From Haliotis rufescens (Eukaryota): a stretch of 64,000 nucleotides of DNA. Shown here in pieces: positions 8,095 to 56,336 of the stretch. The stretch spans positions 558,001 to 622,000 of the forward strand of contig NW_025963879.1 in NCBI RefSeq assembly GCF_023055435.1. The letters are read 5' to 3'. A program made the position numbers and the translations under genes. Within the stretch, counting starts at the first letter, position 1; each line of letters opens with the position of its first letter. A model generated the notes under the pieces. That model had not been told where the DNA came from. It made no database searches and saw only the letters and a program-made list of their open reading frames with translations.

Positions 8095-8100
8095 TTTATT
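8095..8100 (-). terminator. Polyadenylation signal AATAAA of A2 (equivalent site at 21827-21832 for A1)
   Basis: AATAAA on the minus strand ~40 nt after the stop codon; conserved in both complete A copies. Confidence 0.5.
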
Positions 8101-8138
8101 CAACATGGAATACCAGACAAATTGATAAAACAATATTT

Positions 8139-11100
8139 TTATCCGAGCTGGATTTGGTCCCTGCTTGTTGCAAGCACACGAACACTCGCTGCTTCAAGGT
8201 TGTAGAATCCTACAGCAGAACCGGCCGTGCAGTCTCCATTCTCGATCTGCCCAATAACCACCTGTTCTCCAGTCGTTAGGCTGCAAGATATTGGTCCACC
8301 GAAGTCGCCCTGGAAGTAAGGACACAACTAATTATGTATTAACGTTCAATTTTAATCATATTGCATCGCAGAGTTTGTTCGGACCTTTTTATTCAGGTCC
8401 TGGTATTCAGAATTGATTGGAACTTTACCTTTCGTGCCAATGCTTGTTATTGCAATTGAGTTCGTTGAAGCCTACTCTAACGCATTCATGGTCTTCTGGC
8501 ACAGAAGTGAGTGAGCGGGATGTCACCGATGTCACATATGAGGAAAGGTAAACAATAGACACAAATACAAATACACTACGCATTTAAAATAACAAATGAT
8601 CTTCCCAACCGCCCCTCCTCTTCGATGAGAATTAAAGGGTTTTAGGTGTAGAAGGTAGTAACGTTTCGAGATAGAGGCTTCACTATGAAACCATTTCAGC
8701 CTGGAAATAAGGAAACAATATACATACCGCACATGTAGAGCCACTGGGACTGATGAAGCAGTTATATGTGATGGCAGTGTTCGTGAAGTCAAAGACAGCG
8801 GAAGTGTCGGTGGCTGAAAGAAGTGCTTGACACGTGTCGGTTGGCTGCAGACTGGGGATATCCAGGTACTCGAAGGCAGGAGTTGAAGTTCCTGTGATGC
8901 AGAAGAGACGTGCGAGGTTGAGCATATGATATTCCAGGGTAGGTGGGATTGCAGGGTTGGGGAGATGAGATTGTTTAAAACAAATAATCACTTGGGAAAA
9001 TGAAGGGTTGTGGACTTGCAGATAGTTTGGGGCTCTTTCTTCCAGAGGTGAAGCTCTAACTTACGAAATATTTACCCGTGGGGCTAAAACAAGGAATCAG
9101 TATAATGTGCCTTATGAATCCATCTTAAACTGCGGCATTCTATCTCAGAGTGCTAGCACCACAACACTGGCATCAATCCGGACTGGTACAAACAGCCACA
9201 CGCACACGTGCATGCAAGTGAAATAATCTTGAACACGATGTTATACCCCATTTCACTTCACCCCACTGTCTAAAACTCCGAGATGGTATCTTGCATCATT
9301 GACGCCCACTTTTACACATGCGTCACTACGCATCTTCCACTCTTCTGAGATCGCTGCTCACCGGCATTATCAGAGAATCCTGCAGCAGCAACCTTGCAGG
9401 TATCCAGGAGGATGTCGCTTGCCATAGTGCTGGAATAGACACAGGCGATGCCGGGGCAGCTGTTTGACGTCACTGCTGTAGGTAAGGTCACTTCAACAGG
9501 GCCACCTACTCCTCCTGCGGTTGCTGAAATTTCCAAAGGTAAGGATACCTGTACATTGAGTTGATACAATCTGGAAATGCGGAACTACATATTTCTGTCC
9601 ATGGTAAGATAGGTAAGACGTACATTTTTAAACAAAATATTTGTTCCCCTTCTCCTAATTTCTACCTCAACATGTACAAAAGAACGAACCATCATGTATG
9701 TAAATACTCGGGAGATCAACAGCGTACTTGCGATAACTTATGTTCTTTTCATGTGAATAAAATGTGTAAACGAAAACCTAAACACACATCATTGTGAAGT
9801 GACCTGTATCTTACCTGTGATGCCTGTTGCGATAACGGTTCCATCCTGAGCCACAACACTACGAATAGAAAAATATACAGTTGAACTGGCTGCTTTTTCA
9901 GAATGTGTCCGAAACCAGATCAGAGCTGGGTGAAGGAAGGAAACTACCCGTGAGGACAATGTGACATTTTAGTGCTGTCTTTTCGTTGTGAGTGAGTGAG
10001 TTGGTAGTTAGAAGTTGGCTTCAGACATTGTACCCATGTTGGGAATCAAACCCTGTCTTTTAACCAGTAGGCTGTCCCACCATCCAATGGGGCTCGTCGA
10101 ACAAGGGTTCAATTACGACGACGCCTGTGGTGTTTGCATTTCAGTGATACATGTTGCACTTTTGGATTTATACATGTAAAAACACCTGACACATATTTGT
10201 GCTGTGACATACATGATCCTTAACTATAACTATAGGGACGAAATTGTAGAGCTTGAGAGGATCTTTTGGGAAGATCGACAATAACGATAGGTAATCAAGT
10301 ATTTGCAATGCAACATTGTCCATTTTGAAAAGTCCAAAATATTGAATATATATTATTGAACGTTCTATCCCTTTTGACAGCAATATGATCTGCAAGGTTC
10401 AGGAAAATTGTCAAATAAGCGAACCTAGCATGTGAAATGTCGTGCCTGCATCACAAGTGTAAAGTTAGTCGACTCCCCACTGATCTTGGTGCCTTAGGTT
10501 CACTACTTCCTTATCTCTTGGCGCAGATCAGGAGGATGCCACTGTGATTGCCCTTCTGGTTATCTGCGTAATGCTAAATGGTACAATTGAGCGGTATATT
10601 ATTACCAACAATTACACTAATAAAACACTACCTCCTATTAATAATAATATCTTAATAGTAATGAGTATCATATAGCCAGCTTACTCTGCTCCGTTTGCAA
10701 AAGCAGCACAGTTGCTGGGTATAGACAGGGTCGTGCCACTGGTGACGACTCCAGTGCATACAGTTGCTCCACCGATTTGGATGGCCACAAGCCCTGGGAA
10801 CTCATCGCATCCAGCGATAGCAAGGCCGTTCAGTAGCCTCGTGGTGGCGGTTGGGGCGGTTGAGGCCTCAGCTGGACAAACTGAAATTGTACACATAATA
10901 GTCAGTGAGTATGTTCTTGACGCCGCCATCAGCAATATTCCAGCTACACCCTGTCTGTAAATATTCAGGCACAGGAGTGGTTGATCTGATAAGCAGCATA
11001 AACCAGTGACTGAAAGCATGAACATCGATCCATATCATAACGATGGTCCGTAAGCAGCACATTAGGGTTACTGGAAACAATTCTACCCATGAATCTCCAC

Positions 11101-14100
11101 GCTTGTTCTGGTGGTAAATAAATATAGAACAATAAAATGTTTATGAAACTCACATCGTGTTGTGGCTGTTGTTGTTGGAGCTGCAGTAGTAGTTGTGGTA
11201 GTGGTAGTGGTAGTGTTAGTGGGTGCAGCTGTTGTTGTAGTTGGAGCAGCTGTTGTAGTCGTGGGAGCAGCTGTTGTAGTAGTGGTTGTAACAGCAACAG
11301 TTGTTGGAGAACATTGTTGTTCTCCCACACATCCGCAGTATACAACAGAGCTTTGTGGTCTATAATAGTAGCAGCCTCTCCTGGAGTATCGGGATCCATA
11401 GTAGTAGGAAGCATCTGAAACAAACAAGACACGCGATATTCACACACGGGTTTGTCGGCAAAATGTGTGTTTTCTGCGTCGAGGGATACGACGGGACTGA
11501 CAACTGTAAAAACGAATGAGACTGTGTGAGGCAATCTGTTTCTAATCGGGTTATTTTTCACGGAAAGAAAGGTTACAAATAAGCTTCTCAATCAAAGAAT
11601 CACCATCAAAGTCCCGGTTAAGTCATTTCAGAACGTGTATGGTGCATAGCTAAACATTTAAAGCAATTTGCCCCTGGCTTGGCAACATGATGCGCTGTTC
11701 TCTCCCATGCAATGACCTTCACATGGAGTGTTTGAACCACCTAACCCACTGGCTCCATATTGAGAGGGTGCTACCGGTAGATTAGGACACAAAACATGTA
11801 CTTACCATTTTCGCAAACACATGGTATTATTACTGAATTTCCGTGATGCATTCACTAATTTTCCATCACTTATTTGCCTTTTACGCCTTTTTATGATTTG
11901 TTGGTTTGTTGTGTAACGCCGCACTCAGCAATATTCGAGCTATATGACAGCGGTCTATAAATAATCGTGTCTGGACCAGACAATCCAGTGTTTGATATCA
12001 TGAGCATTAATCGACGCATTTCGGATCGATGACATGCATCAACCAAGTCAGCGAGTCTGACCACCCTTTCCCGTTAGTCGCCTCTTACGACAAGCATAGT
12101 CGCATTTTACAGCAAGTATGGGTTGCTGAAGACCTATTCTTCGCCAGATCTTTACGGGTCTTTACGCCCTATGGAATCTGGTTCCGCCGATTATTAAATT
12201 TTCTGGCGTTCACGTTTCTACTATAAAGGCTTCCAAATCTGGAAATATTCAGGACCTCTCGCTGCGTATCACCACCTGAGAAAGTGGCATTTAAGATGGC
12301 GACATCAATAGATCATTCATTCAATAATGCACTTGATTAATATTTATCAGCAAAAAACTTATATATTATGTGTTTGATTATTTCTCTATTTCGGCTAACC
12401 AGGCCTATTCAGTTGTCATTGGCGCATATGCCGTCAATGTATTACGACGTCAAAACCGTCGAGCATGGCAACATGCATGTGTCACAGTTCACAGTACATC
12501 TATTTCGAACAGAAAAAAACTCTTTTATTTACAGTGTCGATATAAGGTCAATTTCGCACATTTGAAGGTGTTATTCCTTTTTTGATTCCTGCTATTTAAT
12601 ATTTGAAATTTCTGGATTACACGGTTGGTTTCCGATCATCGAATACTTAATGCCGAGTACCAAGCAGGGTATCATCATGTATCATATTTTGGTATTACGC
12701 GGTCGGGTATCGAACCACTGACCTTTCGCTCTCTTGAGTGTTCTAGAGTGATACGGGGGCACGGGTGGCCCAGTAACCTAAGGCGCTGCGATTCGCTGTG
12801 CAGAGCTGCGTCCCTTGGGCACGCCAGAAACCTACGATTGTGGGTTTGAATCCCGGTTCGCCCCGATTATGTTTCTAGGTTTGTCAGCACCTACCCGTGT
12901 TCGTAGTCCCTATCATGGGTTTCACAGAAGTGGTAAACGTCTGAGACCTGCATCACGTAGGGCTTTCCTCTCACATTAAGCTGACACGCTGTGATATAAC
13001 TGGAATACTGTTAAAAGCAGCGTTAAACCCAACTCGCTCTAGAGTGATACTAGGATAATTACCAGTCCGTTGTTTTGTTTCACCACAAACTGTTCTTATC
13101 ACTGAGTTAAACTAATTCGTAGTTAAAAGCAATAAACACCTTGCTGAAAGAGTCCATACAATTGCGACTAAACCATGAGCATGTGTTTTATAACCATTAT
13201 CAATTCAATTCAGTTCAATTCAATTCGGGGGCACGGGTGGCCCAGTCGTCTAAGGCGACGTGATTCGCTGTGCAGAGTTGCGTCCCTTAGGCACGCCAGA
13301 AACCTATGATTGTGGGTTCGAATCCCGGTTCGCTCCGATTATGTTTCTAGGTTTGTCAGCACCATACCCGTGCTCGTGGGTTTCACAGAAGTGGTAAACG
13401 TCTGAGACCTGCATCACTTCGGGCTTTCCTCCCACATTAAGCTGACACGCCGCGATATTACTGGAATATTGTTNNNNNNNNNNNNNNNNNNNNNNNNNNN
13501 NNNNNNNNNNNNNNNNNNNNNNNNNNNNNNNNNNNNNNNNNNNNNNNNNNNNNNNNNNNNNNNNNNNNNNNNNNNNNNNNNNNNNNNNNNNNNNNNNNNN
13601 NNNNNNNNNNNNNNNNNNNNTTTCTTTATTAACTCAAACAACCAGCCGGTGATATATGAGCAACAATAATAACAGACATATATACCCCCAATTTTTTTTT
13701 TAGACTAACCAGCCGTGACTCACAGAATCCGGTTGATTAAAAACTACACAAAGATCACACCTGTTTAATAAGCTCTTAATGAACTCCATCCAGTTGTTTC
13801 TATTGTTATTAGTATTATTTATAGAATTTATGTATTTCAATATTAGGGTTGAAAATTTTAGCACAGGTCGATTATTACTTATATGTTTCTGCCAAAACGA
13901 AATCATCCTCTTATATATGATTCTACATATTGGAAATCTCCCAAATTAACCATACATCATATAACCTGGTGTTGAGTTTCTAAGATTGAAGGCAAGTTTA
14001 ATGAATTGTAAATGTACTTTTTCCAATACTGAATGATTTTCGTCTCCTCAAGTTTCACAACCATAGTGAGTGAGTGAGTATGGTTTTACACCGCTTTTAA

Positions 14101-14696
14101 CAATATTCCAGCAATATCACGGCGGGGGACACCAGAAATGGGCTTCACACATTGTACCCATGTCAGGAATCGAACCCGGGTTTTCGGCGTGACGAGCGAA
14201 CGCTTTAACCACTAGGCTACCCGACCGCCCCTTCACAACCATAGGTTAGAATAGGCAAGATTAGAACATCAAAGGCTTTGAGAAGACAATCTACAGGTAA
14301 ATTTAAATTCCGTGCTCTTTTTAATAAAGAGTGATAATACCAAGTGTTCGCGAAAAGAAACTATTGATCTGACATGAGCGTCTGTTTGGGGTGAATAATC
14401 AGTTGGCTTTAGCCGTTACTTTGTTATACAAGATTCATGAATTGTATGTAATAATATATGTATAACCGCACTGATTACTTACAATATCGAGCCCATCCAC
14501 AGTTGTTGTTACCGTTACGGCAGCAGTCTCCCGAGTAGTCGACGTAGCTGTAGCGGGGCCTGAAGTGTCGCAGTGTAGATTGACTTTCAGCCTTTAAAGC
14601 ACTTTCATAATTCTCTGTCTGATACTTCATGGAGAGATATTCGCAACTCACCATCACTGCCAGTGATAGGCAGACTAGTATGGGAAGGCAATTCAT
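8139..14696 (-). CDS. Subfamily A paralog A2: secreted serine-protease homolog (S1 pseudoprotease) with N-terminal Tyr/Cys-rich domain and Thr-rich linker, ~403 aa, 7 exons
   Basis: Exons joined by hand: complement(join(14483..14696,11154..11414,10685..10880,9815..9858,9362..9523,8728..8891,8139..8309)). All introns GT-AG, phases 1,1,2,1,1,0, 1212 nt with no internal stop. Signal peptide MNCLPILVCLSLAVMVSC. S1-like motifs TTR|LLNG, VCTGVV..PSNC, IACVY, STCAGDFGGPISC. Confidence 0.88.
11895..12160 (-). mobile_element. SINE family with central GTCGTAAGAGGCGACTAA motif; other copies ~25508-25778, 32218-32287, 50965-51145, 61392-61570
   Basis: Multiple dispersed copies, an (AACC/AAAC)n tail, and flanking tttacgcc repeats. 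The 3' end resembles the other SINE and LINE tails. Confidence 0.7.
12755..13037 (+). mobile_element. tRNA(Leu-like)-derived SINE with 13-bp TSD
   Basis: TSD tctagagtgatac at 12742-12754 and 13038-13050. The site is empty in paralog A1 (~26207-26219). Confidence 0.85.
13226..13473 (+). mobile_element. Second copy of the tRNA(Leu-like) SINE, inserted in the (ATTCA)n tail of a LINE and running into the N gap
   Basis: Same sequence as 12755-13037; absent from the equivalent position in A3. Confidence 0.8.
13474..13620. other. Assembly gap (147 N) in intron 1 of A2
   Basis: Run of N. Confidence 1.
14067..14231 (-). mobile_element. Short tRNA(Asp-like)-derived SINE with 13-bp TSD; older copies near 9990-10085, 38860-39005, 47830-47960 and 58290-58420
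   Basis: Minus strand reads GGTAGCCTAGTGGTTAAAGCG...GTCACG...GGTTCGATTCC with an (ACTC)n tail. TSD ttcacaaccatag at 14054-14066 and 14232-14244. The site is empty at ~1206 in A3. Confidence 0.85.
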
Positions 14697-21870: not shown

Positions 21871-24800
21871 TTATCCGAGCTGGATTTGGTCCCTGCTTGT
21901 TGCAAGAACACGAACACTCGCTGCTTCAAGGTTGTAGAATCCTACAGCAGAACCGGCCGTGCAGTCACCATTTTCGATCTGCCCAATAACCACCTGTTCT
22001 CCACTCGTTAGGCTGCAAGATATTGGTCCACCGAAGTCGCCCTGGAAGTAACGACAGAACTAATTATGTATTAACGTTGAATTTTTGAGCGTATTGCATC
22101 GCAGAGTTTGTTCGGACCGTTATATTCAGATCCTGGTATTCAGAATTGATTGGAACATTACCTTTCGTGCCAATGCTTGTTATTGCAATTGAGTTCGTAT
22201 AGCCTACTCTAACAAATTCATGGTCTTCTGGCACAGAAGTGTGAGTGAGCGGGATGTCACCGATGTCACATGTGAGGAAACGTCAACAAAAGACACAAAT
22301 ACAAATACACTACGCATTTAAAATAACAAATGATCTACCCAACCGCCCCTCCTCTTCGATGAGAATTAAAGGGTTTTAGGTGTAGAAGGTAGTAACGTTT
22401 CGAGATAGAGGCTTCACTATGAAACCATTCAGCCTGGAAATAAGGGAAACAATATACATACCGCACATGTAGAGCCACTGGGGCTGATGAAGCAGTTATA
22501 TGTGATGGCAGTGTTCGTGAAGTCAAAGACAGCGGAAGTGGGGCTGGCTGAAAGAAGTGCTTGACACGTGTCGGTTGGCTGCAGACTGGGGATATCCAGG
22601 TACTCGAAGGCAGGAGTTGAAGTACCTATGATGCAGAAGAGACGTGCGAGGTTGATCATATGATATTCCAGGTTAGGTGGGATTGTTTAAAACAAATAAT
22701 CACTTGGGAAAATGAAGGGTTGTGACTTCCAGATAGTTTTGGGGCTCTTTCTTCCAGAGGTGAAGCTCTAACTTACGAAATATTTACCCGTGGGGCTAAA
22801 ACAAGGAATCAGTATAATGTGCCTAAGCAATCCATCTTAAACTGCGGCATTCTATCTCAGAGTGCTAGCACCACAACACTGACATAAATCCGGACTAGTA
22901 CAAACAGCCACACGCACACGTGCATGCAAGTGAAATAATCTTGAACACGATGTTATACCCCATTTCACTTCACCCCACTGTCTAAAATTCCGAGATGGTA
23001 TCTTGCATCATTGACTCCCACTTTTACACATGCGTCACTACGCATCTTCCACACTTCTGAGATCGCTGCTCACCGGCATTATCAGAGAATCCTGCAGCAG
23101 CAACCTTGCAGGTATCCAGGAGGATGTCGCTTGCCATAGTGCTGGAATAGACACAGGCGATGCCGGGGCAGCTGTTAGACGTCACTGCTGTAGGTAAGGT
23201 CACTTCAACAGGGCCACCTACTCCTCCTGCGGTTGCTGAAATTTCCAAAGGTAAGGATACCTGTACATTGAGTTGATACAATCTGGAAATGCGGAACTTC
23301 ATATTTCTGTCCATGGTAAGATAGGTAAGACGTACATTTTTAAACAAAATATTTGTTCCCCTTCTCCTAATTTCTACCACAACATGTACAAAAGTACAAA
23401 CCATCATGTATGTAAATACTCGGGAGAGGATAAATTACTTGCGATAAATTATGTTCTTTTCATGTTAATAAAATGTGTTTATACGAAAAACTAAACACAC
23501 ATCATTGTGAAGAGACCTGTCTCTTACCTGTGATGCCTGTTGCGATAACGGTTCCATCCTGAGCCACAACACTACGAATAGAAAAATATACATATGAATT
23601 GGCTGCTTTTTCAGAATGTGCCCGAAACCAGATCAGAGCTGGGTGAACGAAGGAAACTACCCGTGAGGACAATGTGACATTTTAGTGCTGTCTTTTCGTT
23701 GTGAGTGAGTGAGTTGGTGTGTAGCTAGAAGTTGGCTTCAGAGATTGTACCCATGTGGGGAACCAAACCCACCGTCCAATGGGGCTCGTCGAACAAGGGT
23801 ACAATTACGACGACGCCTGTGGTGTTTGCATTTCAATGATACATGTTGTACTATTGGAATTATATACGTAAAACCACCTGACACACATTTGTGCTGTGAC
23901 ATACATGATCCTTAACTATAACTATAGGGACGAAATTGTAGAGCTTGAGAGGATCTTTTGGGAAGATCGACAATAACGATAAGTAAACAAGTAATTTCAA
24001 TGCAACATTGTCCATTTTGATAAATTGTCAAATAAGCGAACCTAGCATGTGAAATGTCGTGCCTGCATCACAAGTGTAAAGTTAGTCGACTCCCAACTGA
24101 TCTTGGTGCCTTAGGTTCACTACTTCCTTATATCTTGGCGCAGATCAGGAAGATGCCACTGTGATTGCCCTTCTGGCAATCTGCGTAATGCTAAATGGTA
24201 CTATTGAGCGGGATATTATTACCAACAATTACACAAATAAAACACTACCTCCTATTAATAATAATATCTTAATAGTAATGAGTATCATATAGCCAGCTTA
24301 CTCTGCTCCGTTTGCAAAAGCAGCACAGTTGCTGGGTATAGACAGGGTCGTGCCACTGGTGACGACTCCAGTGCATACAGTTGCTCCACCGATTTGGATG
24401 GCTACAAGCCCTGGGAACTCATCGCATCCAGCGATAGCAAGGCCGTTCAAAAGCCTCGTGATGGCGGTTGGGGCGGTTGAGGCCTCAGCTGGACAAACTG
24501 AAATTGTACACATAATAGTCAGTGAGTATGTTCTTGACGCCGCCATCAGCAATATTCCAGCTACATCCTGTCTGTAAATATTCGGGCACAGGAGTGGTTG
24601 TTCGATAAGCAACACAAACCAGTGACTGAAAGCATGAACATCGATCCATATCATAACGATGGTCCGTAAGCAGCACATTAGGGTTACTGGAAACAATTCT
24701 ACCAATGAATCTCCACGGTTCTTCTGGTGGTAAATAAATATAGAACAATAAAATGTTTATGAAACTCACATCGTGTTGTGGCTGTTGTTGTTGGAGCTGC

Positions 24801-34112: not shown

Positions 34113-36601
34113 CTAGCCAAGAGTAATCTTGGGTTTACCAAGAATAACTCGGGTTGCTTTTCTGCCGGTGCCAAGGACAATCTTATGTTTGTTAAATCTC
34201 CTGAAAGGCTGGTAGCCCAACAGAATAGACCCTTTCCCTCTACGTTCCACTCTGATAGCCGCAGCCTCCAGATTGTAGAAGCCAACGATGTCGGTGCCGT
34301 CGCAGGGCATGTTCTCAGCCTGACCGATGACTACAATTTCTCCGGTGGTAAGGGGACACATGATAGGAGCTCCAGAATCACCCTTAAAAAATACATTAGG
34401 TAAGGTTAGTAAACAAAAGCGATGAGAACCATTTAAATAATCATAAGAGGTGAAATCGGGTTTAACGTTGCACTTATATAGCGACGTGCTTGCACGTGCG
34501 TGTGTGGCTGCTTGTACTAGTCCGGACTAATGCCGATTTTATAGTGCTAGGTCATTGAGATACCATGCCGCATCAATTACACACTTAGACACAGTAAACT
34601 GACCCCAAGCCAACCAGTCCTAAGGCTTGTTTTATCCCCTTAATACCGAGCACCAGGCAGGGTGACAACAAGTACCATCTTGTAACGTATGGTGGTATGA
34701 CGAGACAGGGGATAGAACCCTGGATATGCCGCTCTCAGGGCAGACGCTCTACCACTAGACCTAAGAGGCGATATGAAATCTCTGCTGAAAGTACAGTCCA
34801 TTGTACGATTCAGACTATATCATTAGCATGAATTTATGAATCACTATCAAGTAGTGATGATCACACGTGTTCGTGAAAAGGTGAGCGGCACTCGTTGCAA
34901 ACACGTACATCTGAAAACACACGAGAACATGTCTTCCAGAAAACCTTGGCACACGTGTCAGAACCACAAGGCTACCCCCTTCTTAATGCATTGGGTCCTA
35001 GGTAATGTGAGGAAGTACGTTGTGTTATATATACGTACACCACAGGTAGAAGATCCTGTATTGAAGAAACAGTTGTACGTAAGACCAGTGCCAAAGAGGA
35101 CGGCTTGACCAGACGCCTGCAGGAGGGCGGGACAATCGGCCGTGGGCTGGAGACTTGGCACGGTGTAGAAGGATAATGTTGCGGGGTTCGTGCCTGAAAA
35201 GTAACACATGCTAAAAAATGAATGAATGTGTGCTGCAACCTTGAAAGACTTCTTAAACGAGACCAGATCGAGGAAGTCTTTCGAACTTTTCATGAGAATG
35301 AATATTTTTCTCAATCCCAATTTGTAAAAGCGTGCATTTGAAACATCCGACTAACGCCGTAGGGTCTAATAAAGTTTCCGGGCATCAAATACTCAATAAC
35401 ACCCGCAAATCTAAACACACATAACATTTATCTACTATAAATATCATATTCATTGCCTGAAAAATAAAGTAGCTGAAATAAACGTCGATCAATGTTTACC
35501 GAGGAACACAAAGCAGATTGAAAGAACATAGGAATTAACAGTTTCTTCCTAATTTTGTCATATGCTTTCTAAAGCCTGTATGATATACCTGCAATATCGT
35601 CATGTCCGGCACCGACAACGACGCAGCTTGTGAGGTCAATGTCATCGACCATGGCAGCGTCATAGATGCATGCAACGCCAGGGCAACTCGTGGAGCTGAT
35701 GGGCGTGGACAGAGTGATTGTGAACGGACCTCCTGTTGCGACGGTGGTGGCTAGGAAACGAGGCAAGACATATCGATATAAATATAAGATATTATGCCCA
35801 TTTTAACCCTAGTCCTACCATTTCACTGCGGTAGACATTATAAATGTACCATATAGGGAATCCAACCTTGGTCTTCGTGAGTGAGTGAGTGAGTGAGTGA
35901 GTGAGTTGGGTTTAACGCCGCTTTTAACAGTATTCCAGTTATATCACGGCATGTCAGCTTAATGTGGGAGGAAAGCCCGAAGTGATGCAGGTCTCAGACG
36001 TTTACCACTTCCGTGAAACCCACGAGCACGGGTATGGTGCTGACAAACCTAGAAACATAATCGGGGCGAACCGGGATTCGAACCCACAATCATAGGTTTC
36101 TGGCGTGCCCAAGGGACGCAACTCTGCACAGCGAATTGCGGCGCCTTAGACGACTGAGCCACCCGTGCCTCCCCCCCCCCCCCCCCCCCCCCCCTGGTCT
36201 TCGTCTGACGAGAGAGCGATTTAATCAGTAGCATCGGCTACCCTTCTTTATATTGTAAGTGTTTTTCATATTTCAATCATACCAGAGTAATATATTAACT
36301 TGGCCCCCCTATCGATGAATATATTTTCATTTGTCATTACATACTGTACATTGCATTCAGAGCTATGCATCAAAGTTGTTGTGCTCTCATCTCAATAGAT
36401 CTCTTGATTATGTGTCGCCATTACTTTGTTTCATAAGTTCGTGGATATTCCAGATATTAATGAAGATTTAGTTACTCGAGAAAAGGAAATCGTTCACTTA
36501 CTGTCAATTACAGGTAGAGTTTCAATGACGGTGCCAGTGGTTGGGTCTTGTAGTTCAAGCCTAAAATAGCATCGATATGCATATCAATGTTAAAGAACAT
36601 T

Positions 36602-36654
<53 letters not shown>

Positions 36655-39520
36655 TAAAAAATGATGATGATGATGATGATGATGATATGGAATGTAGATT
36701 ATTGAATTATCAGTGGATGCCCAGCTTTGGCACAAACTACATGATGGTGTAGCTTGATCATTTTATTACCGTCTTCGCCATGCTTGTGGTTTTGACAAAG
36801 AGGTCCACCCTTGTTACGACTCGGAATATGTAGAGGGCGTCATGGAAAATGACAAATACAAATTCTTTGGAATAGGCCCATTTACAGCCTTAGACCAACA
36901 AATCTGATCTTGTTCTTTTTGATAAATCCAATGAGATCATTTATATCATTGAATTTTCTGTCCCCTTTGACACTAATGTGAATGACAAGACTAAGGAAAA
37001 ACATGGCAAATATGCGGACCTCGCTTTCGAAATGTCACGCTTGCATCCCAAGTACCAAGTTGTCCGACTCCCCATTGTGCCTTAGGTTTGGTACCTCCCA
37101 ATCTGTTGACTGACATTGGGAGAGTACCCGGGTTTGCTACCAGGAATACAGCCCTTCTGACGATCTGGGTAATGCAGAAGGCTGCAGTGTTGCGGAGTCT
37201 TCACATTCTCCGAAAAGTTCTGGGTGGGTTTGACTATGCAGCGCTTCCTGGGAGAAGTCCCATTCGCTGTCTGGGCTGCGTGTAGAGGGGGCAAGGGCGC
37301 TGGGCTGATGATGAGCCTAACCAGCCTGACTGTGCCAGAATCACCCAAACCCTCTTTGGTGCATATTTATATCTTAATCTGTACATGGTAATAACTAAAA
37401 CCGATTACACTGTATCTGTGTAAATGTTCATGCGTTTCCAATGTAGTGAAACAGAAATGAATCAGAGAGAAAAATATTCAGTCATTTTGAGAACATCATA
37501 ATGATCTTCAGAGTAACCTCATTATTACTTCCGAGTAGAACGATTGAGAGTAATAACTTTCCGATATTTGCACATGATAACATTTCGTCATCTAAACAAT
37601 AGTTTGACTTGATGTCACAATGAGTAATATACAGAATAACTCAAATCTCGGATTTACGGTAAAGCTACCAGTTGTTATTGAATACAAGTTTCCTCGTACT
37701 TGACGTGGGCCTTACACTATTCCTTCATTCGCTACGCACAATCAGATTCAGATATTAAATCGTTGGTTATTCTCTGAATATTATACATACGCAGTGCCCA
37801 TGAGCTGAGCACAATTGTTGGGTACGGAGACAGTTGTTGTTGAGGTGACGACGCCCGTGCACACAGTATTTCCCGAAGTGGGGTCCACGACCCTGACGAC
37901 GCCGGGGTTGGTGGTGCAGTCTGTCACAGCGGTACCGCCGAGAATCCTGGTAACGGTAGACTGTGTGGTCGCCGTCGTTGGGCAGACTAGAACAGAGTTC
38001 AGAAATGTATTGACCAATATGTAAGTCACTTGCGCATACGACTTCATTCGCACCGAGAAAAAAGTCCATATTTATTGATGCTACAACAGCCTCCTTTGTT
38101 ACCCGAGTAGGGAGAATTTCCGATTATGGAGAGATTGTTTAGGGAGGTTTGTCAAGGGTAAAGTGACATAAGAGATTACTGATATGACCGACAACGGTGC
38201 TGTTTTTTATGTTTTTATTACTGTCTTCTTTAAAATGTTTTTTTGGAACTAGACATCCGTTTGGGGCGAATTTCGGTTTATAAGCGAAGTCAGTAGCATG
38301 GGCAACAAGCCTAAGGCAATTGTAAGGGCTACAACGGATAATATATATGGTTTTAAGATAGTGTCTTAATGTGATACAGGATAAAATAGGCCGATCATAA
38401 TAGAGCACGTTTACTGCACTTACATCGTGTTACAACAGTGGTAGTTGGGGTGGTGGTTGTAGTTGTAGTTACTGTAGTAGTAGCAGTTGTGGTCGTTGCA
38501 GTTGTGGTTGTAGCAGTTGTAGTTGTAGCAGCTGCAGTAGTAGCAGCTGCAGTAGTAGCAGCAGTAGTAGTTGTTGGAGTTGTGGTAGTAGTAGTTGTAG
38601 TAGTAGTAGTAGTAGTAGTGGTCGTAGTAGTAGTGGTGGTCGTTGTTGTGGTCGTGGTGGTTGTTGTAGCTGCTGGTGCAGCTGTTGTTGCTGCTGCAGT
38701 TGCTGGTACGTTGGAACACGAGGATTGGTAGGAGCTGCAGAGGCACTGGATCTTGCATGAATGATACCAGAAGTTACCAGGATAGAAAGGCATCGTGTTG
38801 AAATAGAAGTAGTTGTTTCCTGCAGGGTTAAGAAATATGGTTTCAGTAACTCTTGTAATAAAACATGATTTTACGCCGCTTTTAGCAATATTCCAACAAT
38901 TTCTCGGCATGGGACACCAGGAACATGTTTGACCCATGTAAAGAATATAGCCCAGGTCTTCAGCACGATGAGCGAACGCTTTAACCACTGGGCTACCCAA
39001 CCGCCTATTTTCGGCCGATATCAGTATAAGTCAGTATTAGTTAATATACATAAATCTCCAATTGCTTGTCGTAAGAACCGACTAAAGGAGTGTGAATGAT
39101 CAGGTTTGGTGGCTGGACTGATTGCATATGATCTTGCAATTTATTAGTTTTATTTTAAGTGTGTAGCATTTGTTTTCCCCCGAACATTTATATTAAATAG
39201 TATCGGTTCATAAATGAGTGTGATATTCAAATGTATGTAAATTCAATACTAACATGTCGAAAGCTATTCATCTAATATTCCTTCTTTGAAAAGTACGTGT
39301 AATTCTTACTTGTTCTGCTGTATCTTTTGTAGTAACGGCAGTCGGCGATGTCGTTAGCACAGCATTGACCAGAAGTATCCAGCCAACACGATCTGATGTC
39401 TCTGGTCTTTTTGCTCACGTCAATGGCTCTCAAGAATGTTTGTCTCTTGAAAAATGCATTTCTGTTTGCCGCGTATGTGACGGCTGCAAACGTCGCCAGT
39501 AGAAGGACCAGCTTCAACAT
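34113..39520 (-). CDS. Subfamily B paralog B3: secreted serine-protease homolog with Cys/aromatic domain, long Thr linker and basic C-terminal tail, ~482 aa, 7 exons
   Basis: complement(join(39310..39520,38424..38819,37791..37986,36502..36560,35589..35750,35039..35193,34113..34382)). 1449 nt in frame; the last acceptor is AAG. Signal peptide MLKLVLLLATFAAVTYA. Motifs VTR|ILGG, VCTGVV..PNNC, STCGGDSGAPIMC. Confidence 0.87.
35879..36194 (-). mobile_element. tRNA(Leu-like) SINE with 10-bp TSD, (ACTC)n tail and 5' poly-G run, in intron 4 of B3
   Basis: TSD tggtcttcgt at 35869-35878 and 36195-36204. Absent from intron 4 of B1 and B2. Confidence 0.85.
36603..36686. repeat. Compound microsatellite (AAT)n + (GAT)n
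   Basis: Directly visible in the sequence. Confidence 0.95.
36690..37370 (+). mobile_element. R4/Dong-like (restriction-like endonuclease) non-LTR fragment in intron 3 of B3
   Basis: IISGCPALAQT and DLVLFDKSNEIIYIIEFSVPFD...KEKHGKYADL (RLE domain). Lies next to (TAA)n(GAT)n and is absent from B1 and B2. Confidence 0.65.
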
Positions 39521-44202: not shown

Positions 44203-47200
44203 CTAGCCAAGAGTAATCTTGGGTTTACCAAGAATAACTCGGGTTGCTTTTCTGCCGGTGCCAAGGACAATCTTATGTTTGTTAAATCTCCTGAACGGCT
44301 GGTAGCCCAACAGAATAGACCCTTTCCCTCTACGTTCCACTCTGATAGCCGCAGCCTCCAGATTGTAGAAGCCAACGATGTCGGTGCCGTCGCAGGGCAT
44401 GTTCTCAGCCTGACCGATGACGACAATTTCTCCGGTGGTAAGGGGACACATCACAGGGGCTCCAGCATCACCCTGAATAATACATTACGTAAGGTTAGCA
44501 TATAAAAGCGATGAGAAATATTTGAAATAATCACATTAAATCTCTGCTGAAAGTCCATTGTACTAGAATATCCATAGCATGTGTTTATGAATCACTATCA
44601 GATGGTGATGGTTTCAGGGGTTCGTGAAAAGTATGCTGCCCCACCGGTGGCACTCGTTACAAACTAATACAAAGACACGTCAATATTTATCTTAAAACAC
44701 ACGGGAAAGTATGATACAAGTTTATATATGGAATTGCATTGGACAAAATGTTGGTCGCTGGTCAAATTTGGCATGTCTTTTACACAGGTATCAGTAACAC
44801 AAGGCTTTCTGCTGCAATCATGCATTGGATGTTAGTTAATGTGAGGAAGTGCGTTGTGTTATATGTACGTACACCACAGGTAGAAGATCCTGTATTGAAG
44901 AAACAGTTGTACGTAAGACCAGTGTCAAAGAGGACGGCTTGACCAGACGCCTGCAGGAGGGCGGGACAATCGGCGGTGGGCTGGAGACTTGGCACGGTGT
45001 AGGAGGATAATGTTGCGGGGTTCGTGCCTGAAAAGAAACACATACTGAAAATTGAATAAAATGTGAAACATTGCTAACTGGGTTCGAATCCCGGACTTCA
45101 AACATCCTATGAATTCTTTTCTTGATCAGTATGTTATTTTTCTCAATCCCCTTTTGTAAAAATGTGCCAGCCTACTCAATGGTGGAAATCTTAACATTTG
45201 AAAATTCGACTAACGCCCTCGGGTCTAAATGAAATTTCCGGTCATCAAATACCCTATAACACCCGCAAATCAGAAAACACGTCACATTTATTTACTGATT
45301 AGCATATCCATTGCGTGACAGCTGAACTAGCTTAAGTTAACATCGATGGACGGGGTATAAAGTTAACCGAGGAAAACAAATCAGATTGAAAGATCATAGG
45401 CATTAACAGTTTCTTCCTAATTTTGTCAAAATCCTTTCTTAAACCAGTATTATGTACCTGCAAAATCGTCATGTCCAGCACCAACAACGACGCAGCTTGT
45501 GAGGTCAATGTTGTCGACCATGGCAGCGTCATAGATGCATGCAACGCCAGGGCAACTCGTGGAGCTGATAGGTGTGGTCAGAGTGATTTCGAACGGACCT
45601 CCTGTTGCGAGGGTGGTGGCTAGGAAATGGGACAATACATATGAATGCAAAACTAATGTAAATATAGAGTAAGCAAGGTTTAATGCCCAGTTTATCCCTA
45701 TTCTAGCCATATCAGTGCGGGAGGCATTGTACCGATGAGATACACCCTATCTTGGTATTTGATATGACGAGAGAGAGAGAGAGAGAGAGAGCGATTTAAT
45801 CAGTAGGCTGCCCTTCCAATTGATATTGTACTTGGTAGTTATTCTACCAGGGAAGTATATTTTCTTAATCTTATCACGAAATTGATGAATTATATTTTCG
45901 TTTGTCATTACATATTGTTGTCCTTTCTTTGAGAGCTACGCTTCAAAGTACCTGCACTGTCGTCTAAATCGATCCCTTGGTCATAGGTGTTAATTTTTGG
46001 GTCGGTGTTATTTTTCGTAAGTTCATGGATATTCCAGATATTAATGAAGATTTAGTTACTCGAGCAAAGGAAATAGTTCACTTACTGTCAATAACAGGTA
46101 GAGTTTCAATGACGGTGCCAGTGGTTGGGTCTTGTAGTTCAAGCCTAAAATTAAATCGATATGCATACCAATGTTAAAGAATATTTATCGCGGGGTCACT
46201 TTCTTCTTTGATTTGTTTATTCAAACCTCATTATTTTACCAACAATGAAATAATAATGGTAACTAAAAACGGTAACGCTGTATCTGTGAAAATATGTAGT
46301 GAAAAAGTACGAATGTATTAGAGAGAAAAATATTAAGTCATTATGAAAATATCAGAATGTACTTCAGAGAAAGCCTATTATTACTTCCGGGTAGAAGGAA
46401 TGAGAGTAATAACTTTCCGATATTGCACATTATGTAGCGTCATGAGATCACACATTGATAATATTACGTCATCTTAACAATAGTTTGACTTGAAGTCACA
46501 ATGAGTAATATACAGAATAACTCAAATCTCGGATTTACGATTTAGCTACGAGCTGTGATTGAATATAAGTTTCCTCGTACTTGACGTGAGCCTTACACCA
46601 TGCCTTCATTCGCTACGAACAATCAGACTCAACATTGGAATCGTTGGTTATTCTCTGAATACATACGCAGTGCCCATGAGCTGAGCGCAGTTGTTGGGTA
46701 CGGAGACAGTTGTTGTTGAGGTGACGACACCCGTGCACACAGTACTTCCCGAAGCGGGGTCCACGACCCTGACGACGCCGGGGTTGGTGGTGCAGTCTGT
46801 CACAGCGGTACCGCCGAGAATCCTGGTAACGGTAGACTGTGTGGTCGCCGTCGTTGGGCAGACTAGAATAGAGTTCAGAAATGTATTGACCAATATGTAA
46901 GTCACTTGCGCATACGACTTCATTCGCACCGAAAACAAAATACCAGTTTACTTTGAGCGCTAGATACTGAACTTATAAAGGTTATTACTGTCTCCTTTAA
47001 AAAATTGTCACCCGTTTCCGGTTAAGGAGGTGTCGGTTTAGAGAGGTTTGCCAAAGGAGCAAAAGACATGTCTGCTTCGACAGACAACAGCTGTGCGGGT
47101 TTTTTTTATTATAGCTATCTTCTATACCATTTTTGGTTGACATAACACCCGTTTAGGGTGAATATTGGTTTATAGAGAGGTCATTTTAGCGAGCATTGCA

Positions 47201-54732: not shown

Positions 54733-56305
54733 CTAGCCAAGAGTAATCTTGGGTTTACCAAGAATAACTCGGGTTGCTTTTCTGCCGGTGCCAAGGACAA
54801 TTTTATGTTTGTTAATTCTCCTGAACGGCTGGTAGCCCAACAGAATAGACCCTTTCCCTCTACGTTCCACTCTGACAGCCGCAGCCTCCAGATTGTAGAA
54901 GCCAACGATGTCGGTGCCGTCGCAGGGCATGTTCTCAGCCTGACCGATGACGACAATTTCTCCGGTGGTAAGGGGACACATCACAGGCGCTCCAGCATCA
55001 CCCTGAATAATACATTACGTAAGGTTAGTATATAAAAGCGATGAGAAACATTTGAAATAATCACACGAAGTTTTTGCTGAAAGTCCATTGTACTATTATA
55101 TCCATAGCATGTGTTTATGAATCACTATCAGGTGGTGATGGTACCAGGTGTTCGTGAAAAGGTGAAAGTATGCCGCCCCACCGGTGGCACTCGTTACAAA
55201 CTAATACAAAGACACGTCAATATTTATCTTAAAACACACGGGAAAGTATAATACAAGTGAATATGAGGAATTGCATTGGACAAAATGTTGGTCGCTGGTC
55301 AAATTTGGCATGTCTTTTACACAGGTATCAGTAACACAAGGCTTTCTGCTGCAATCATGCATTGGATGTAAGGTAATGTGAGGAAGTGCGTTGTGTTATA
55401 TATACGTACACCACAGGTAGAAGATCCTGTATTGAAGAAACAGTTGTACGTAAGGCCAGTGTCAAAGAGGACGGCTTGACCAGACGCCTGCAGGAGGGCG
55501 GGACAATCGGCAGTGGGCTGGAGACTTGGCACGGTGTAGGAGGATAATGTTGCGGGGTTCGTGCCTGAAAAGAAACACATACTGAAAATTGAATTAATGT
55601 GAAACATTGCTAACTGGGTTCGAATCCCGGACTTTTAACATCCTATGAATTCTTTTCTTGATCAGTATGGTGATTTTATCAATCCACATTTGTAAAAATG
55701 TGCCAGTCTACTCAATGGTGGAAATCTTAACATTTGAAAATTCGACTAACGCCCTCGGGTCTAAATGAAATTTCCGGTCATCAAATACCCTAAAACACCC
55801 GCAAATCAGAAAACACGTCACATTTATTTACTGATTTATCATATCCATTGCGTGACAGCTGAACTAGGTGAAGTTAACATCGATGGACGGGGTATAAAGT
55901 TAACCGAGGAAAACAAATCAGATTGAAAGATCATAGGCATTAACAGTTTCTTCCTAATTTTGTCAAAATCCTTTCTTAAACCAGTATTATGTACCTGCAA
56001 AATCGTCATGTCCAGCACCAACAACGACGCAGCTTGTGAGGTCAATGTTGTCGACCATGGCAGCGTCATAGATGCATGCAACGCCAGGGCAACTCGTGGA
56101 GCTGATAGGTGTGGTCAGAGTGATTTCGAACGGACCTCCTGTTGCGAGGGTAGTGGCTAGGAAATGGGACAATACATATGAATGCAAAACTAATGTAAAT
56201 ACAGAGTAAGCAAGGTTTAATGCCCAGTTTATCCCTATTCTAGCCATATCAGTGCGGGAGGCATTGTACCGATGAGTTACACCCTATCTTGGTATTTGAT
56301 GTGAC

Positions 56306-56336
<31 letters not shown>

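What the first reader, a model, noticed from the sequence alone, without database searches (positions are those of the whole stretch)
8139..10880. Catalytic triad lost, but fold and zymogen-activation switch retained
Seen: the TAAHC motif reads PSNC (A) or PNNC (B), so His57 is Asn. The DIALL region reads GGPVEVTL or GGPFTITL, so Asp102 is missing. GDSGGP reads GDFGGP (A) or GDAGAP (B1/B2), and the SWG region reads GQIEN or GQAEN. Yet all 12 Cys align between A and B, the activation site is kept (TR|ILGG, TR|LLNG), and so are Asp194 and the pre-activation Cys (RFCP). Established: in S1 proteases the new Ile16 N-terminus pairs with Asp194, and pseudoproteases such as the HGF beta chain use cleavage to switch on binding. 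Inference: these proteins may be switched on by an upstream protease, with the two chains held together by the Cys1-Cys122-type bond.
Basis: partly seen in the sequence, partly recalled or inferred. Interest (0 to 1): 0.75.

Follow-up and report, generated by a model that had tools for sequence, protein, structure and literature searches.

The report
Abalone mucin-stalked dead protease genes
This red-abalone gene, one of eight tandem copies, encodes a secreted trypsin-shaped protein that has lost its cutting residues but keeps the cut site that normally switches such proteins on, so it probably works by binding rather than cutting.

Summary
Window 8139-10880 (minus strand) is the 3' part of an intact, spliced gene. 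Its exons match RefSeq XP_046333475.2, "cell wall protein DAN4-like" of Haliotis rufescens, letter for letter.

The domain is a very divergent S1 (chymotrypsin-fold) domain:
- No single exon, nor the window protein itself, reaches Pfam Trypsin. An ortholog just does (21.2 bits against a cut-off of 20.6).
- A family profile finds only S1 proteases among solved structures (best E 0.0013).
- A low-confidence AlphaFold model built from family sequences alone matches only S1 chains (Foldseek E 2e-5; VIA Z 9.7).

Triad positions read Asn or Phe at 57, Gly or Asn at 102, and F/A/S/T/M/N or a deletion at 195. In contrast, the pre-cleavage Cys-Pro, the P1 Arg, the P2' Leu and Gly193-Asp194 are invariant from Haliotis to the whelk Babylonia.

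Paralog dN/dS is about 0.27, and A-type mRNA is abundant. Cleavage itself is not shown.

Verdict: an unannotated gastropod family of serine-protease homologues with a new architecture. The kind is known (HGF beta chain, insect SPHs).

The scan had already reported other dead-protease clusters elsewhere on this contig.

The parts
10685..10880 (-). Exon E1 of copy A1. It encodes (F)CPAEASTAPTATTR|LLNG...VCTG...PSNC...ANGA. It holds the pre-cleavage Cys, the putative activation site, the Cys42 and Cys58 equivalents, and Asn at the His57 position.
   Evidence: Reading frame and splice sites. RNA joints 10880/11154 and 9858/10685. Exact substring of P0006 at residue 160.
10834..10839 (-). Codons of the P1 Arg and P1' Leu (TTR|LLNG), the putative zymogen-type cleavage site.
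   Evidence: Arg is present in 8 of 8 relatives that cover the site, and the P2' Leu in 8 of 8. All 8 genomic copies have R|[IL][LM].
10711..10713 (-). Asn codon at the His57 position (PSNC). It lies 41 residues after the new N-terminus, with Cys at +26 and +42, as in chymotrypsin numbering (16, 42, 57, 58).
   Evidence: The chymotrypsin numbering is recalled.
9815..9858 (-).
   Evidence: Phase argument. RNA joints 9858/10685 and 9523/9815. Substring of P0006 at residue 225.
9362..9523 (-). Exon E2: TAGGVGGPVEVTL...SNSCPGIACVY...DTCKVAAAGFSDNA. It covers the Asp102 region (Gly at 9501-9503), an extra Cys, and the Cys122 and Cys136 equivalents.
   Evidence: Joints 9523/9815 and 8891/9362. hhalign register.
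8728..8891 (-). Exon E3: (G)TSTPAFEYLDIPSLQPTDTC...YNCF...STCA. It holds the Cys168, Cys182 and Cys191 equivalents.
   Evidence: Joints. HMMER alignment to plasma kallikrein.
8139..8309 (-). Exon E4 with the stop codon: GDFGGPISC...VVIGQIENGDC...GFYNLE...QIQLG*. Asp194 is at 8304-8306 and Phe at the Ser195 position is at 8301-8303. It also holds the Cys201 and Cys220 equivalents.
   Evidence: Joint 8309/8728. hhalign of this exon's profile against two canonical trypsins of the same genome gives E 0.0017 in register.
11154..11414 (-). Upstream exon E0 of the same gene: a Tyr/Cys-rich segment followed by a Thr-rich mucin-like stalk ending ...TTTATTR.
   Evidence: Joint 10880/11154, and a loose end at 11414 that continues into an exon near 14480-14510. 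Substring of P0006.
21871..24497 (-). Paralog A2, same five exons, GDFGGP.
34113..37986 (-). Paralog B0: PNNC, GGPFTITL and GDSGAP (Ser195 kept), with a basic C-terminal tail.
44203..46862 (-). Paralog B1: PNNC, GGPFEITL, GDAGAP.
54733..57427 (-). Paralog B2: PNNC, GGPFEITL, GDAGAP.

Best explanation
The stretch is the protease-like half of a secreted mosaic protein. The layout is signal peptide, Tyr/Cys-rich head, O-glycosylatable Thr-rich stalk, then a strongly diverged S1 (chymotrypsin-fold) domain that cannot act as a classical serine protease.

Shown here:
- The gene is intact, spliced as modelled, and belongs to an 8-copy tandem array.
- Its fold assignment is S1.
- His57, Asp102 and (in most copies) Ser195 are replaced.
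- The residues of the zymogen-activation apparatus are conserved across gastropods.

Inferred:
- A trypsin-like protease cuts after the conserved single Arg (TTR|LLNG).
- The new hydrophobic N-terminus inserts and pairs with Asp194, ordering the former substrate-binding loops.
- The head and stalk stay attached through the conserved Cys-Pro cysteine, bonded to the Cys aligned with Cys122.
- The cut two-chain form then acts by binding a partner (as cofactor, ligand or decoy) rather than by hydrolysis.
For: Gene model:
- Canonical AG/GT sites and open exons are present in 5 of 5 window copies.
- Five CT..AC joints in the contigs of four runs fall exactly at the predicted exon ends.
- All five A1 exons are exact substrings of RefSeq XP_046333475.2.

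S1 fold:
- PF00089 scores 21.2 bits (cut-off 20.6, E 2.8e-4) for the H. rubra ortholog.
- The family profile against PDB sequences gives 111 hits at E<=10. The 60 listed are all S1 proteases, with best E 0.0013 and Cys136/168/191/201 and the GDSGGP motif in register.
- ESM Atlas features place it nearest Trypsin clusters, at 0.97, 0.95 and 0.95.
- hhalign gives E 5.6e-4 over 127 columns.
- The AlphaFold model from a 10-sequence, family-only alignment gives Foldseek best E 2.2e-5. All 49 rows listed (ranks 1-50) are S1 chains, and 103 hits have E<=0.001.
- In the VIA-align search of 48,161 chains, all 50 listed are S1-fold. Protein Z is top at Z 9.7, rmsd 4.7 over 200 residues.

Dead triad: position 57 is N or F, position 102 is G or N, and position 195 is F/M/A/N/S or deleted. 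The genomic copies add T at 195.

Switch kept: Cys-Pro 7 of 7, P1 Arg 8 of 8, P2' Leu 8 of 8, Gly193-Asp194 9 of 9, Cys122-equivalent 9 of 9. These are among 34 invariant columns out of 220.

Constraint: pooled paralog dN/dS is 0.27, Fisher p 5e-6.

Secretion: an N-terminal hydrophobic leader is present in P0006, P0001 and P0009, judged by eye.
Against: - No protein-level data exist. Cleavage, the two-chain form and the lack of activity are all untested.
- The window's own protein gets no PF00089 hit at E<=10, and its own model is very poor (mean pLDDT 39.8).
- The better model is of an ortholog and is still low-confidence (pLDDT 50.7, pTM 0.40). TM-scores are only about 0.5, and VIA notes that Z of 7-8 is common for unrelated best hits.
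- The N-terminal half has no significant sequence match to canonical S1. E1 against two trypsins gives E 0.74 in the wrong register, and E1 against PDB gives only chance antibody hits.
- The E4 profile found no canonical S1 among 1.84 billion representatives.
- One relative (H. asinina, P0003) lacks residues 193-195, including Asp194, so the salt-bridge partner is dispensable at least there, or that gene model is faulty.
- Thr-rich sequence next to the Arg may be O-glycosylated, which could block cleavage.
- The RNA contigs at the 3' end carry variants of the neighbouring copy A0, so expression of A1 itself is not separated from its near-identical paralogs.
Confidence: 0.55

Rival explanations
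1. Same dead S1-fold protein, but the Arg site is not a conformational switch. Either the protein stays single-chain, or the cut only trims or releases the head and stalk, and the conserved R-x-L-G-G segment is kept for folding or secretion reasons.
For: Nothing here shows cleavage. Some S1 pseudoproteases work without activation cleavage (Protein Z, recalled; it is the top VIA hit). P0003 lacks Gly193-Asp194. The flanking Thr-rich sequence may be glycosylated.
Against: The P1 Arg (8 of 8), P2' Leu (8 of 8), Asp194 (9 of 9) and both cysteines of the presumed interchain bond are invariant across two gastropod lineages that share only 23-24% identity. That pattern is hard to explain without use of the site.
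Confidence: 0.3
2. Some copies keep a non-classical hydrolytic activity. The candidates are those with Ser or Thr at position 195: B0 (GDSGAP), the D-type copy (GDSGGG), the C-type copy (GDTGAP) and Babylonia P0029 (GDSGAP).
For: Ser or Thr is present at 195 in 3 of 8 genomic copies and in 1 of 4 Babylonia paralogs. The oxyanion-hole Gly193 is kept.
Against: His57 is Asn in 8 of 8 abalone copies and Phe in 4 of 4 Babylonia proteins, and there is no Asp at 102. Position 195 varies freely among close paralogs (F, A, S, T), as expected for an unconstrained site.
Confidence: 0.06
3. The S1 resemblance is a chance pattern of motifs in a Cys-rich secreted domain of another fold.
For: There are no exon-level Pfam or PDB hits. 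P0006, P0001, P0003 and P0009 get no PF00089 hit. Both models are low-confidence.
Against: Four independent kinds of test point only to S1: Pfam over its cut-off for one ortholog, the profile against PDB, language-model features, and two fold searches of a family-only model. The Cys spacing is also in register.
Confidence: 0.04
4. The copies are decaying duplicates of a protease gene and have no function.
For: Loss of the triad and rapid divergence from canonical S1.
Against: All exons are open with canonical splice sites in 5 of 5 window copies. dN/dS is 0.21-0.32. Spliced contigs reach word depth 25,000. The architecture is conserved in Babylonia.
Confidence: 0.03

Closest known systems
HGF / MSP beta chains (plasminogen-related growth factors; vertebrate S1 pseudoproteases)
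   Same: S1 fold without a working triad. They have a single-Arg activation site, Asp194 is kept, the two chains are held by a Cys122-type disulfide, and cleavage switches on receptor binding (recalled knowledge). HGF beta chains appear among the fold hits: 7moa_D, and 7mo7_D and 1si5_H at Z 9.0 and 8.7.
   Different: The abalone proteins have no PAN or kringle domains (Pfam scans of P0006, P0001 and P0009 found none at E<=10). A Tyr/Cys head and a mucin stalk take their place. The family is gastropod-only, sits in an 8-copy tandem array, and has no known receptor.
Arthropod clip-domain serine protease homologues (e.g. PPAF-II, PDB 2B9L)
   Same: Secreted dead S1 domains behind a small disulfide-rich N-terminal module. 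They are processed by upstream proteases and act as cofactors in immune cascades (recalled). 2b9l is rank 5 in Foldseek, has Z 7.7 in VIA, and is a sequence-profile hit at E 0.057.
   Different: No clip domain was detected by Pfam. A long Thr-rich stalk is present. The lost residues differ: cSPHs usually change only Ser195 to Gly (recalled), whereas here all three triad positions are changed.
Protein Z, haptoglobin and scabies-mite SMIPP-S (other S1 pseudoproteases)
   Same: A dead triad on an S1 scaffold, with function by binding. They are among the top VIA hits: 3f1s_B at Z 9.7, 4f4o_C at 9.1, and 3h7o_B and 3h7t_B at 8.5 and 8.1.
   Different: No detectable close sequence relationship. They have different accessory domains, and the status of the activation site differs among them (recalled).
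Other dead-protease clusters on the same abalone contig (scan notes s1-805549 and s1-816317)
   Same: Same genome and contig. They are tandem secreted trypsin-fold genes without a working triad, behind small Cys-rich modules (AI notes).
   Different: Those genes lie 246 kb and 373 kb beyond this window. Canonical PF00089 exon hits lie in that part of the contig (716-978 kb), whereas none of the matches listed lies in this window. My family profile finds matches only at 542-631 kb, so they form a separate family.

Membership tests
Peptidase family S1 / Pfam PF00089 Trypsin (as a non-peptidase homologue) | Sequence match to the family model above its curated cut-off | tested here: inconclusive
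   The window protein P0006 has no PF00089 hit at E<=10, and its single exons have none. The ortholog P0002 scores 21.2 bits against a 20.6 cut-off. P0007 scores 15.3 bits, below the cut-off. P0001, P0003 and P0009 have none.
Peptidase family S1 / Pfam PF00089 Trypsin (as a non-peptidase homologue) | Two-beta-barrel chymotrypsin fold | tested here: met
   Tested on the family-only AlphaFold model of ortholog P0002 (pLDDT 50.7). All 49 Foldseek rows listed (ranks 1-50) are S1 chains, with best E 2.2e-5 and TM about 0.5 over 220-245 columns. All 50 VIA rows are S1-fold, with Z up to 9.7, and model residues 48-254 match chymotrypsin-numbered residues 28-234. Caveat: the model is low-confidence and is of an ortholog 76-80% identical to the window protein.
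Peptidase family S1 / Pfam PF00089 Trypsin (as a non-peptidase homologue) | Catalytic triad His57, Asp102, Ser195 (defines active members only) | tested here: not met
   Position 57 is N or F, position 102 is G or N, and position 195 is F/M/A/N/S/T or deleted. So it is a homologue, not a peptidase.
Peptidase family S1 / Pfam PF00089 Trypsin (as a non-peptidase homologue) | Conserved cysteines at positions 42/58, 136/201, 168/182 and 191/220 | tested here: met
   Cys is present at the expected spacing and in register in the alignments. The pairing itself was not tested. The Cys220 column reads Q in Babylonia in my alignment.
Zymogen-activated two-chain S1 homologues (HGF-like logic) | P1 Arg/Lys followed by a hydrophobic N-terminus, plus Asp194 and an interchain Cys pair | tested here: met
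   Sequence features are invariant: R 8 of 8, P2' L 8 of 8, D194 9 of 9, pre-site Cys 7 of 7, Cys122-equivalent 9 of 9.
Zymogen-activated two-chain S1 homologues (HGF-like logic) | Actual cleavage at the site, and a cleavage-dependent gain of binding | not testable with these tools
   This needs protein chemistry. The RNA contigs say nothing about it.
Arthropod clip-domain SPH | N-terminal clip domain | tested here: not met
   Pfam scans of the full-length P0006, P0001 and P0009 at E<=10 list no clip domain.
Plasminogen-related growth factors (HGF/MSP) | PAN/apple and kringle domains before the S1 domain | tested here: not met
   The same Pfam scans list none.

The most novel reading that the evidence does not exclude
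The eight-gene array is a gastropod-specific, cleavage-gated binding system. An upstream trypsin-like protease cuts a mucin-anchored dead protease, whose remodelled former active-site cleft then engages a partner as cofactor, ligand or decoy. The cleft residues at 195 and 214-216 differ between paralogs (F/A/S/T at 195; IEN or AEN at 214-216). This would be a molluscan counterpart of the insect SPH or vertebrate HGF logic that arose independently. Paralog diversification would tune target specificity, for example in mucus, immunity or reproduction.
Probability: 0.25. Interest if true: 0.65.

Novelty: new variant of a known kind. Interest (0 to 1): 0.45.

Why it matters
RefSeq names these proteins "cell wall protein DAN4-like", "mucin-22-like" or "uncharacterized", names driven by the Thr-rich stalk. 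Recognising them as serine-protease homologues corrects the annotation.

The family is a clean natural experiment. Every triad position has drifted and position 195 is free to vary, yet the activation-site residues are frozen across two distant gastropod lineages. That pattern would separate the "switch" function of the S1 scaffold from catalysis.

If cleavage-gated binding is confirmed, it gives molluscs an SPH-type module, which has so far been studied mainly in arthropods and vertebrates. The very high transcript depth suggests a major secreted product worth locating.

Tried and rejected
Led nowhere:
- Pfam on the five stop-free exon segments gave no Trypsin hit.
- The PF00089 six-frame scan of the genome listed 147 matches, none in the window (only the best 150 of 298 candidates were scored).
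- The E4 exon profile against PDB sequences gave 0 hits at E<=10. The E1 profile gave 17 hits, all antibody light chains or a CoA ligase, which I take as chance.
- hhalign of E1 against two canonical trypsins gave E 0.74 in the wrong region. Both trypsin ORFs also lack their own N-terminal segment.
- hmmsearch of the E4 profile over 1.84 billion representatives gave 5 hits at E<=0.001. Three are family members. The other two (P0004, P0005) are bacterial repeat proteins (T9SS tail, RTX), which I take as chance.
- The AlphaFold model of the window's own protein P0006 with 5 sequences had pLDDT 39.8 and was not used for fold search.

Rejected exon models:
- A first model with a longer E1b (acceptor at 9885) was dropped in favour of the acceptor at 9858, because of its polypyrimidine tract, the B-copy homology and the RNA joint.
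- My own idea that Glu in PVEVTL sits at position 102 was dropped for the hhalign register, which puts Gly there. Neither is an Asp.

Alignment not used: A10, with exon fragments as rows, was built but set aside because MAFFT misplaced fragment ends.

Literature: four full-text searches found nothing on this family ('DAN4-like'+Haliotis; abalone+'serine protease homolog'; pseudoprotease+mollusc; Haliotis+trypsin-like+'catalytically inactive'). I saw search listings and abstract starts only, and read no paper.

Other limits:
- Residue-level structural superposition and Cys-Cys distances could not be obtained, because the tools give no coordinates.
- The pooled dN/dS uses B1 in two pairs, so those pairs are not fully independent.
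Full report
WHAT IS THERE. The window is G000:C101:558001-622000 of a 1.33-Gb animal genome. Minus-strand reading frames at 8139-11439 hold a multi-exon gene. tblastn of its exon translations against the window finds five tandem copies, all on the minus strand:
- A1 at 8142-11439
- A2 at 21874-25058
- B0 at 34215-38035
- B1 at 44305-46980
- B2 at 54835-57545

I worked out the exon ends of A1 from reading frames, AG/GT sites and splice phases:
- E0, 11154-11414: a Tyr/Cys-rich segment followed by a Thr-rich stalk
- E1, 10685-10880
- E1b, 9815-9858
- E2, 9362-9523
- E3, 8728-8891
- E4, 8139-8309, including the stop codon

I looked for it because the E1 donor leaves two bases and the E2 acceptor needs one. 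All five copies keep open exons and canonical splice sites.

INDEPENDENT CHECK OF THE MODEL. Contigs of four public runs of one study (X1-X4) were laid on 8000-13450. They show joints with CT..AC ends, which are GT..AG on the minus strand, at 8309/8728, 8891/9362, 9523/9815, 9858/10685 and 10880/11154. These are exactly the predicted boundaries.
- Contigs across the joints have word depth up to 25,000, against 7-65 for contigs that cover introns.
- The runs are listed only as 'RNA? (a guess)'. The spliced joints are what show that they hold RNA-derived sequence.
- At 8161 and 8163 the dominant contigs carry the letters of the neighbouring copy A0, not A1. A-type expression is therefore shown, but expression of A1 alone is not.

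Each A1 exon translation is an exact substring, in order, of protein P0006. P0006 is XP_046333475.2, 'cell wall protein DAN4-like [Haliotis rufescens]', and is encoded on a contig of 25,740,563 bases, the length of C101.

Whole-protein steps used this and other public proteins returned by the searches.

THE OBSERVATION. All quoted motifs are present:
- A copies: RFCP (across the E0/E1 junction), TTR|LLNG, PSNC, GGPVEVTL, GDFGGP, GQIEN.
- B copies: TR|ILGG, PNNC, GGPFEITL (B1, B2) or GGPFTITL (B0), GDAGAP (B1, B2), GQAEN.

The 12 Cys are invariant columns in 5 of 5 copies.

IS IT AN S1 DOMAIN? At exon level the answer cannot be obtained:
- No Pfam hit at E<=10.
- No S1 hit for the E4 or E1 profiles among PDB sequences.
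- No canonical S1 protein among 1.84 billion representatives for the E4 profile. That search gave five hits: three family members and two bacterial repeat proteins, which I take as chance.
- The window protein P0006 also gets no PF00089 hit.

With whole-domain information the answer is consistent:
- PF00089 scores 21.2 bits (cut-off 20.6) for the H. rubra ortholog P0002 and 15.3 bits for P0007.
- A five-sequence family profile against PDB sequences gives 111 hits at E<=10. The 60 listed are all S1 proteases. The best E is 0.0013, with tCkvaaaGy aligned to nCWVTGWGY and stCagdlGaP aligned to dACKGDSGGP.
- ESM Atlas features place the domain (residues 160-403 of P0006) nearest Trypsin clusters, at 0.97, 0.95 and 0.95.
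- hhalign of the ten-sequence family against two canonical trypsin ORFs of the same genome gives E 5.6e-4 over 127 columns, at only 30% probability.
- hhalign of the E4 exon profile alone gives E 0.0017, in register.

STRUCTURE. The model of P0006 from a five-sequence alignment was poor (mean pLDDT 39.8). Its residues 181-260 did form the strand-strand-strand-short helix-strand pattern expected of the first barrel.

A second model used ortholog P0002 with ten family sequences and no canonical proteases in the alignment. It reached pLDDT 50.7 and pTM 0.40.
- Foldseek against the PDB: 103 matches at E<=0.001, best 2.2e-5. All 49 rows listed (ranks 1-50) are S1 chains, covering 218-249 columns at TM about 0.5.
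- VIA-align against 48,161 representative chains: all 50 listed are S1-fold, with Z up to 9.7. Model residues 48-254 fall on chymotrypsin-numbered residues 28-234.
- Several top rows are known pseudoproteases: Protein Z, haptoglobin, HGF beta chain and SMIPP-S.

The model is low-confidence, and VIA warns that a Z of 7-8 is common. The weight lies in the unanimity of the hits and the full-domain coverage.

THE TRIAD AND THE SWITCH. Taking the residue after the Arg as 16, the simple offset puts Cys at 42, Asn at 57 and Cys at 58 in the A copies without any gap (chymotrypsin numbering is recalled). The B copies have a two-residue insertion before Cys42.

The family beyond the window comprises H. 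rubra, H. cracherodii and H. asinina proteins and four paralogs of the whelk Babylonia areolata. The Babylonia paralogs (LOC143291873, 74, 77 and 78, all on one contig) have the same layout of head, Thr-rich stalk and domain.

In the ten-sequence alignment, 34 of 220 domain columns are invariant in both genera. They include:
- the pre-site Cys-Pro (7 of 7)
- the P1 Arg (8 of 8)
- the P2' Leu (8 of 8)
- the Cys42, 58, 122, 136, 168, 182, 191 and 201 equivalents, plus one extra Cys
- Gly193-Asp194 (9 of 9), Gly196 and Pro198

The triad columns are not conserved. Position 57 is N in Haliotis and F in Babylonia. Position 102 is G or N, in the hhalign register. Position 195 is F, M, A, N, S or deleted.

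Overall identity between the two genera is 23-24%. The activation-site residues are therefore kept far better than the average position. It is indirect, because nothing here shows cleavage.

FAMILY SIZE AND CONSTRAINT. A family profile scanned over the whole genome gives 32 exon matches. All are on C101 between 542 and 631 kb, on the minus strand, which makes eight tandem genes. The three outside the window are:
- another A copy (GDFGGP)
- a C type (TTR|LLGG, PANC, GDTGAP)
- a D type (VR|IMNG, PSNC, GDSGGG)

Position 195 therefore reads F, F, F, S, A, A, T and S in the eight copies, while position 57 is Asn in all eight.

Nei-Gojobori counts, summed exon by exon:

| Pair | dN/dS |
|---|---|
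| A1/A2 | 0.21 |
| B1/B2 | 0.23 |
| B0/B1 | 0.32 |
| pooled | 0.27 (Fisher p 5e-6) |

B1 is used in two pairs.

HOW IT MOST LIKELY WORKS. I read it as a secreted, mucin-stalked, catalytically dead S1 homologue. An upstream trypsin-like protease cuts after the single conserved Arg, and no RxxR motif is present there. The head and stalk stay tethered through the conserved Cys, the new N-terminus pairs with Asp194, and the ordered domain binds a partner.

I put about 0.9 on 'S1 fold and not a classical protease', and about 0.55 on the whole chain including cleavage-gated binding.

The main rival, at 0.3, is the same protein without a functional switch. H. asinina P0003, which lacks residues 193-195, and the possibly glycosylated Thr-rich flank speak for that rival.

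COMPARISON AND NOVELTY. It works like the HGF/MSP beta chains and the arthropod serine protease homologues. It is a member of neither group, because no kringle, PAN or clip domain is found.

It is a non-peptidase homologue of family S1 by fold and, marginally, by sequence.

Four literature searches found nothing on it (listings only). Supplements could not be opened.

Earlier notes of this scan describe other dead-protease clusters 246 kb and 373 kb further along the same contig. My profile does not reach them, so this is a separate and far more diverged family.

I rate it a new variant of a known kind, of moderate interest.

Noticed in passing
window 34374-34382 (minus strand), copy B0: B0 reads GDSGAP, with Ser kept at position 195, while its close paralogs B1 and B2 read GDAGAP. 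B0 still has Asn at position 57 and GGPFTITL.
   Followed up: partly
L009 (G000:C101:541500-549500), L010 (553000-558000), L011 (627000-634000): Three more family copies flank the window: an A-type (GDFGGP), a C-type (GDTGAP, PANC) and a D-type (GDSGGG, PSNC, VR|IMNG). The array therefore has eight genes, all on the minus strand.
   Followed up: partly
window 8161, 8163, 8177: The very deep spliced contigs of runs X1-X4 differ from A1 here. The first two differences match copy A0, just outside the window. The most abundant A-type mRNA in those runs may therefore come from A0 or an allele rather than from A1.
   Followed up: partly
window 11822-12185 and 12732-13450 (intron between the head exon and E0): These stretches carry very high summed contig depth and many non-canonical joints in the four runs. 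They look like dispersed repeats or transposon fragments transcribed elsewhere in the genome.
   Followed up: no
window 34116-34214, 44206-44304, 54736-54834 (minus strand): B-type copies carry a 33-residue basic C-terminal tail (YQPFRRFNKHKIVLGTGRKATRVILGKPKITLG) that is absent from the A types. A types end ...QIQLG, and H. rubra P0008 ends ...AKAKITLG.
   Followed up: no
protein P0003 (Haliotis asinina, 200 aa): This relative lacks the three residues aligned with Gly193-Asp194-x195 (TCQ---GAPIVC). This is either a real deletion of the salt-bridge partner or a faulty gene model.
   Followed up: no
proteins P0009, P0027, P0028, P0029 (Babylonia areolata LOC143291877, 73, 78, 74): A whelk has four paralogs on one contig with near-consecutive LOC numbers. 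They share the same layout of Cys-rich head, Thr-rich stalk and dead S1 domain. Phe sits at position 57, and position 195 reads A, N, N and S.
   Followed up: partly
window 11154-11414 and about 14480-14570 (minus strand): The loose end of RNA contigs at 11414 continues into sequence that matches an exon near 14480-14510 (VTTTVDGLDI). The intron between the head exon and E0 therefore spans the N run at 13474-13620.
   Followed up: partly
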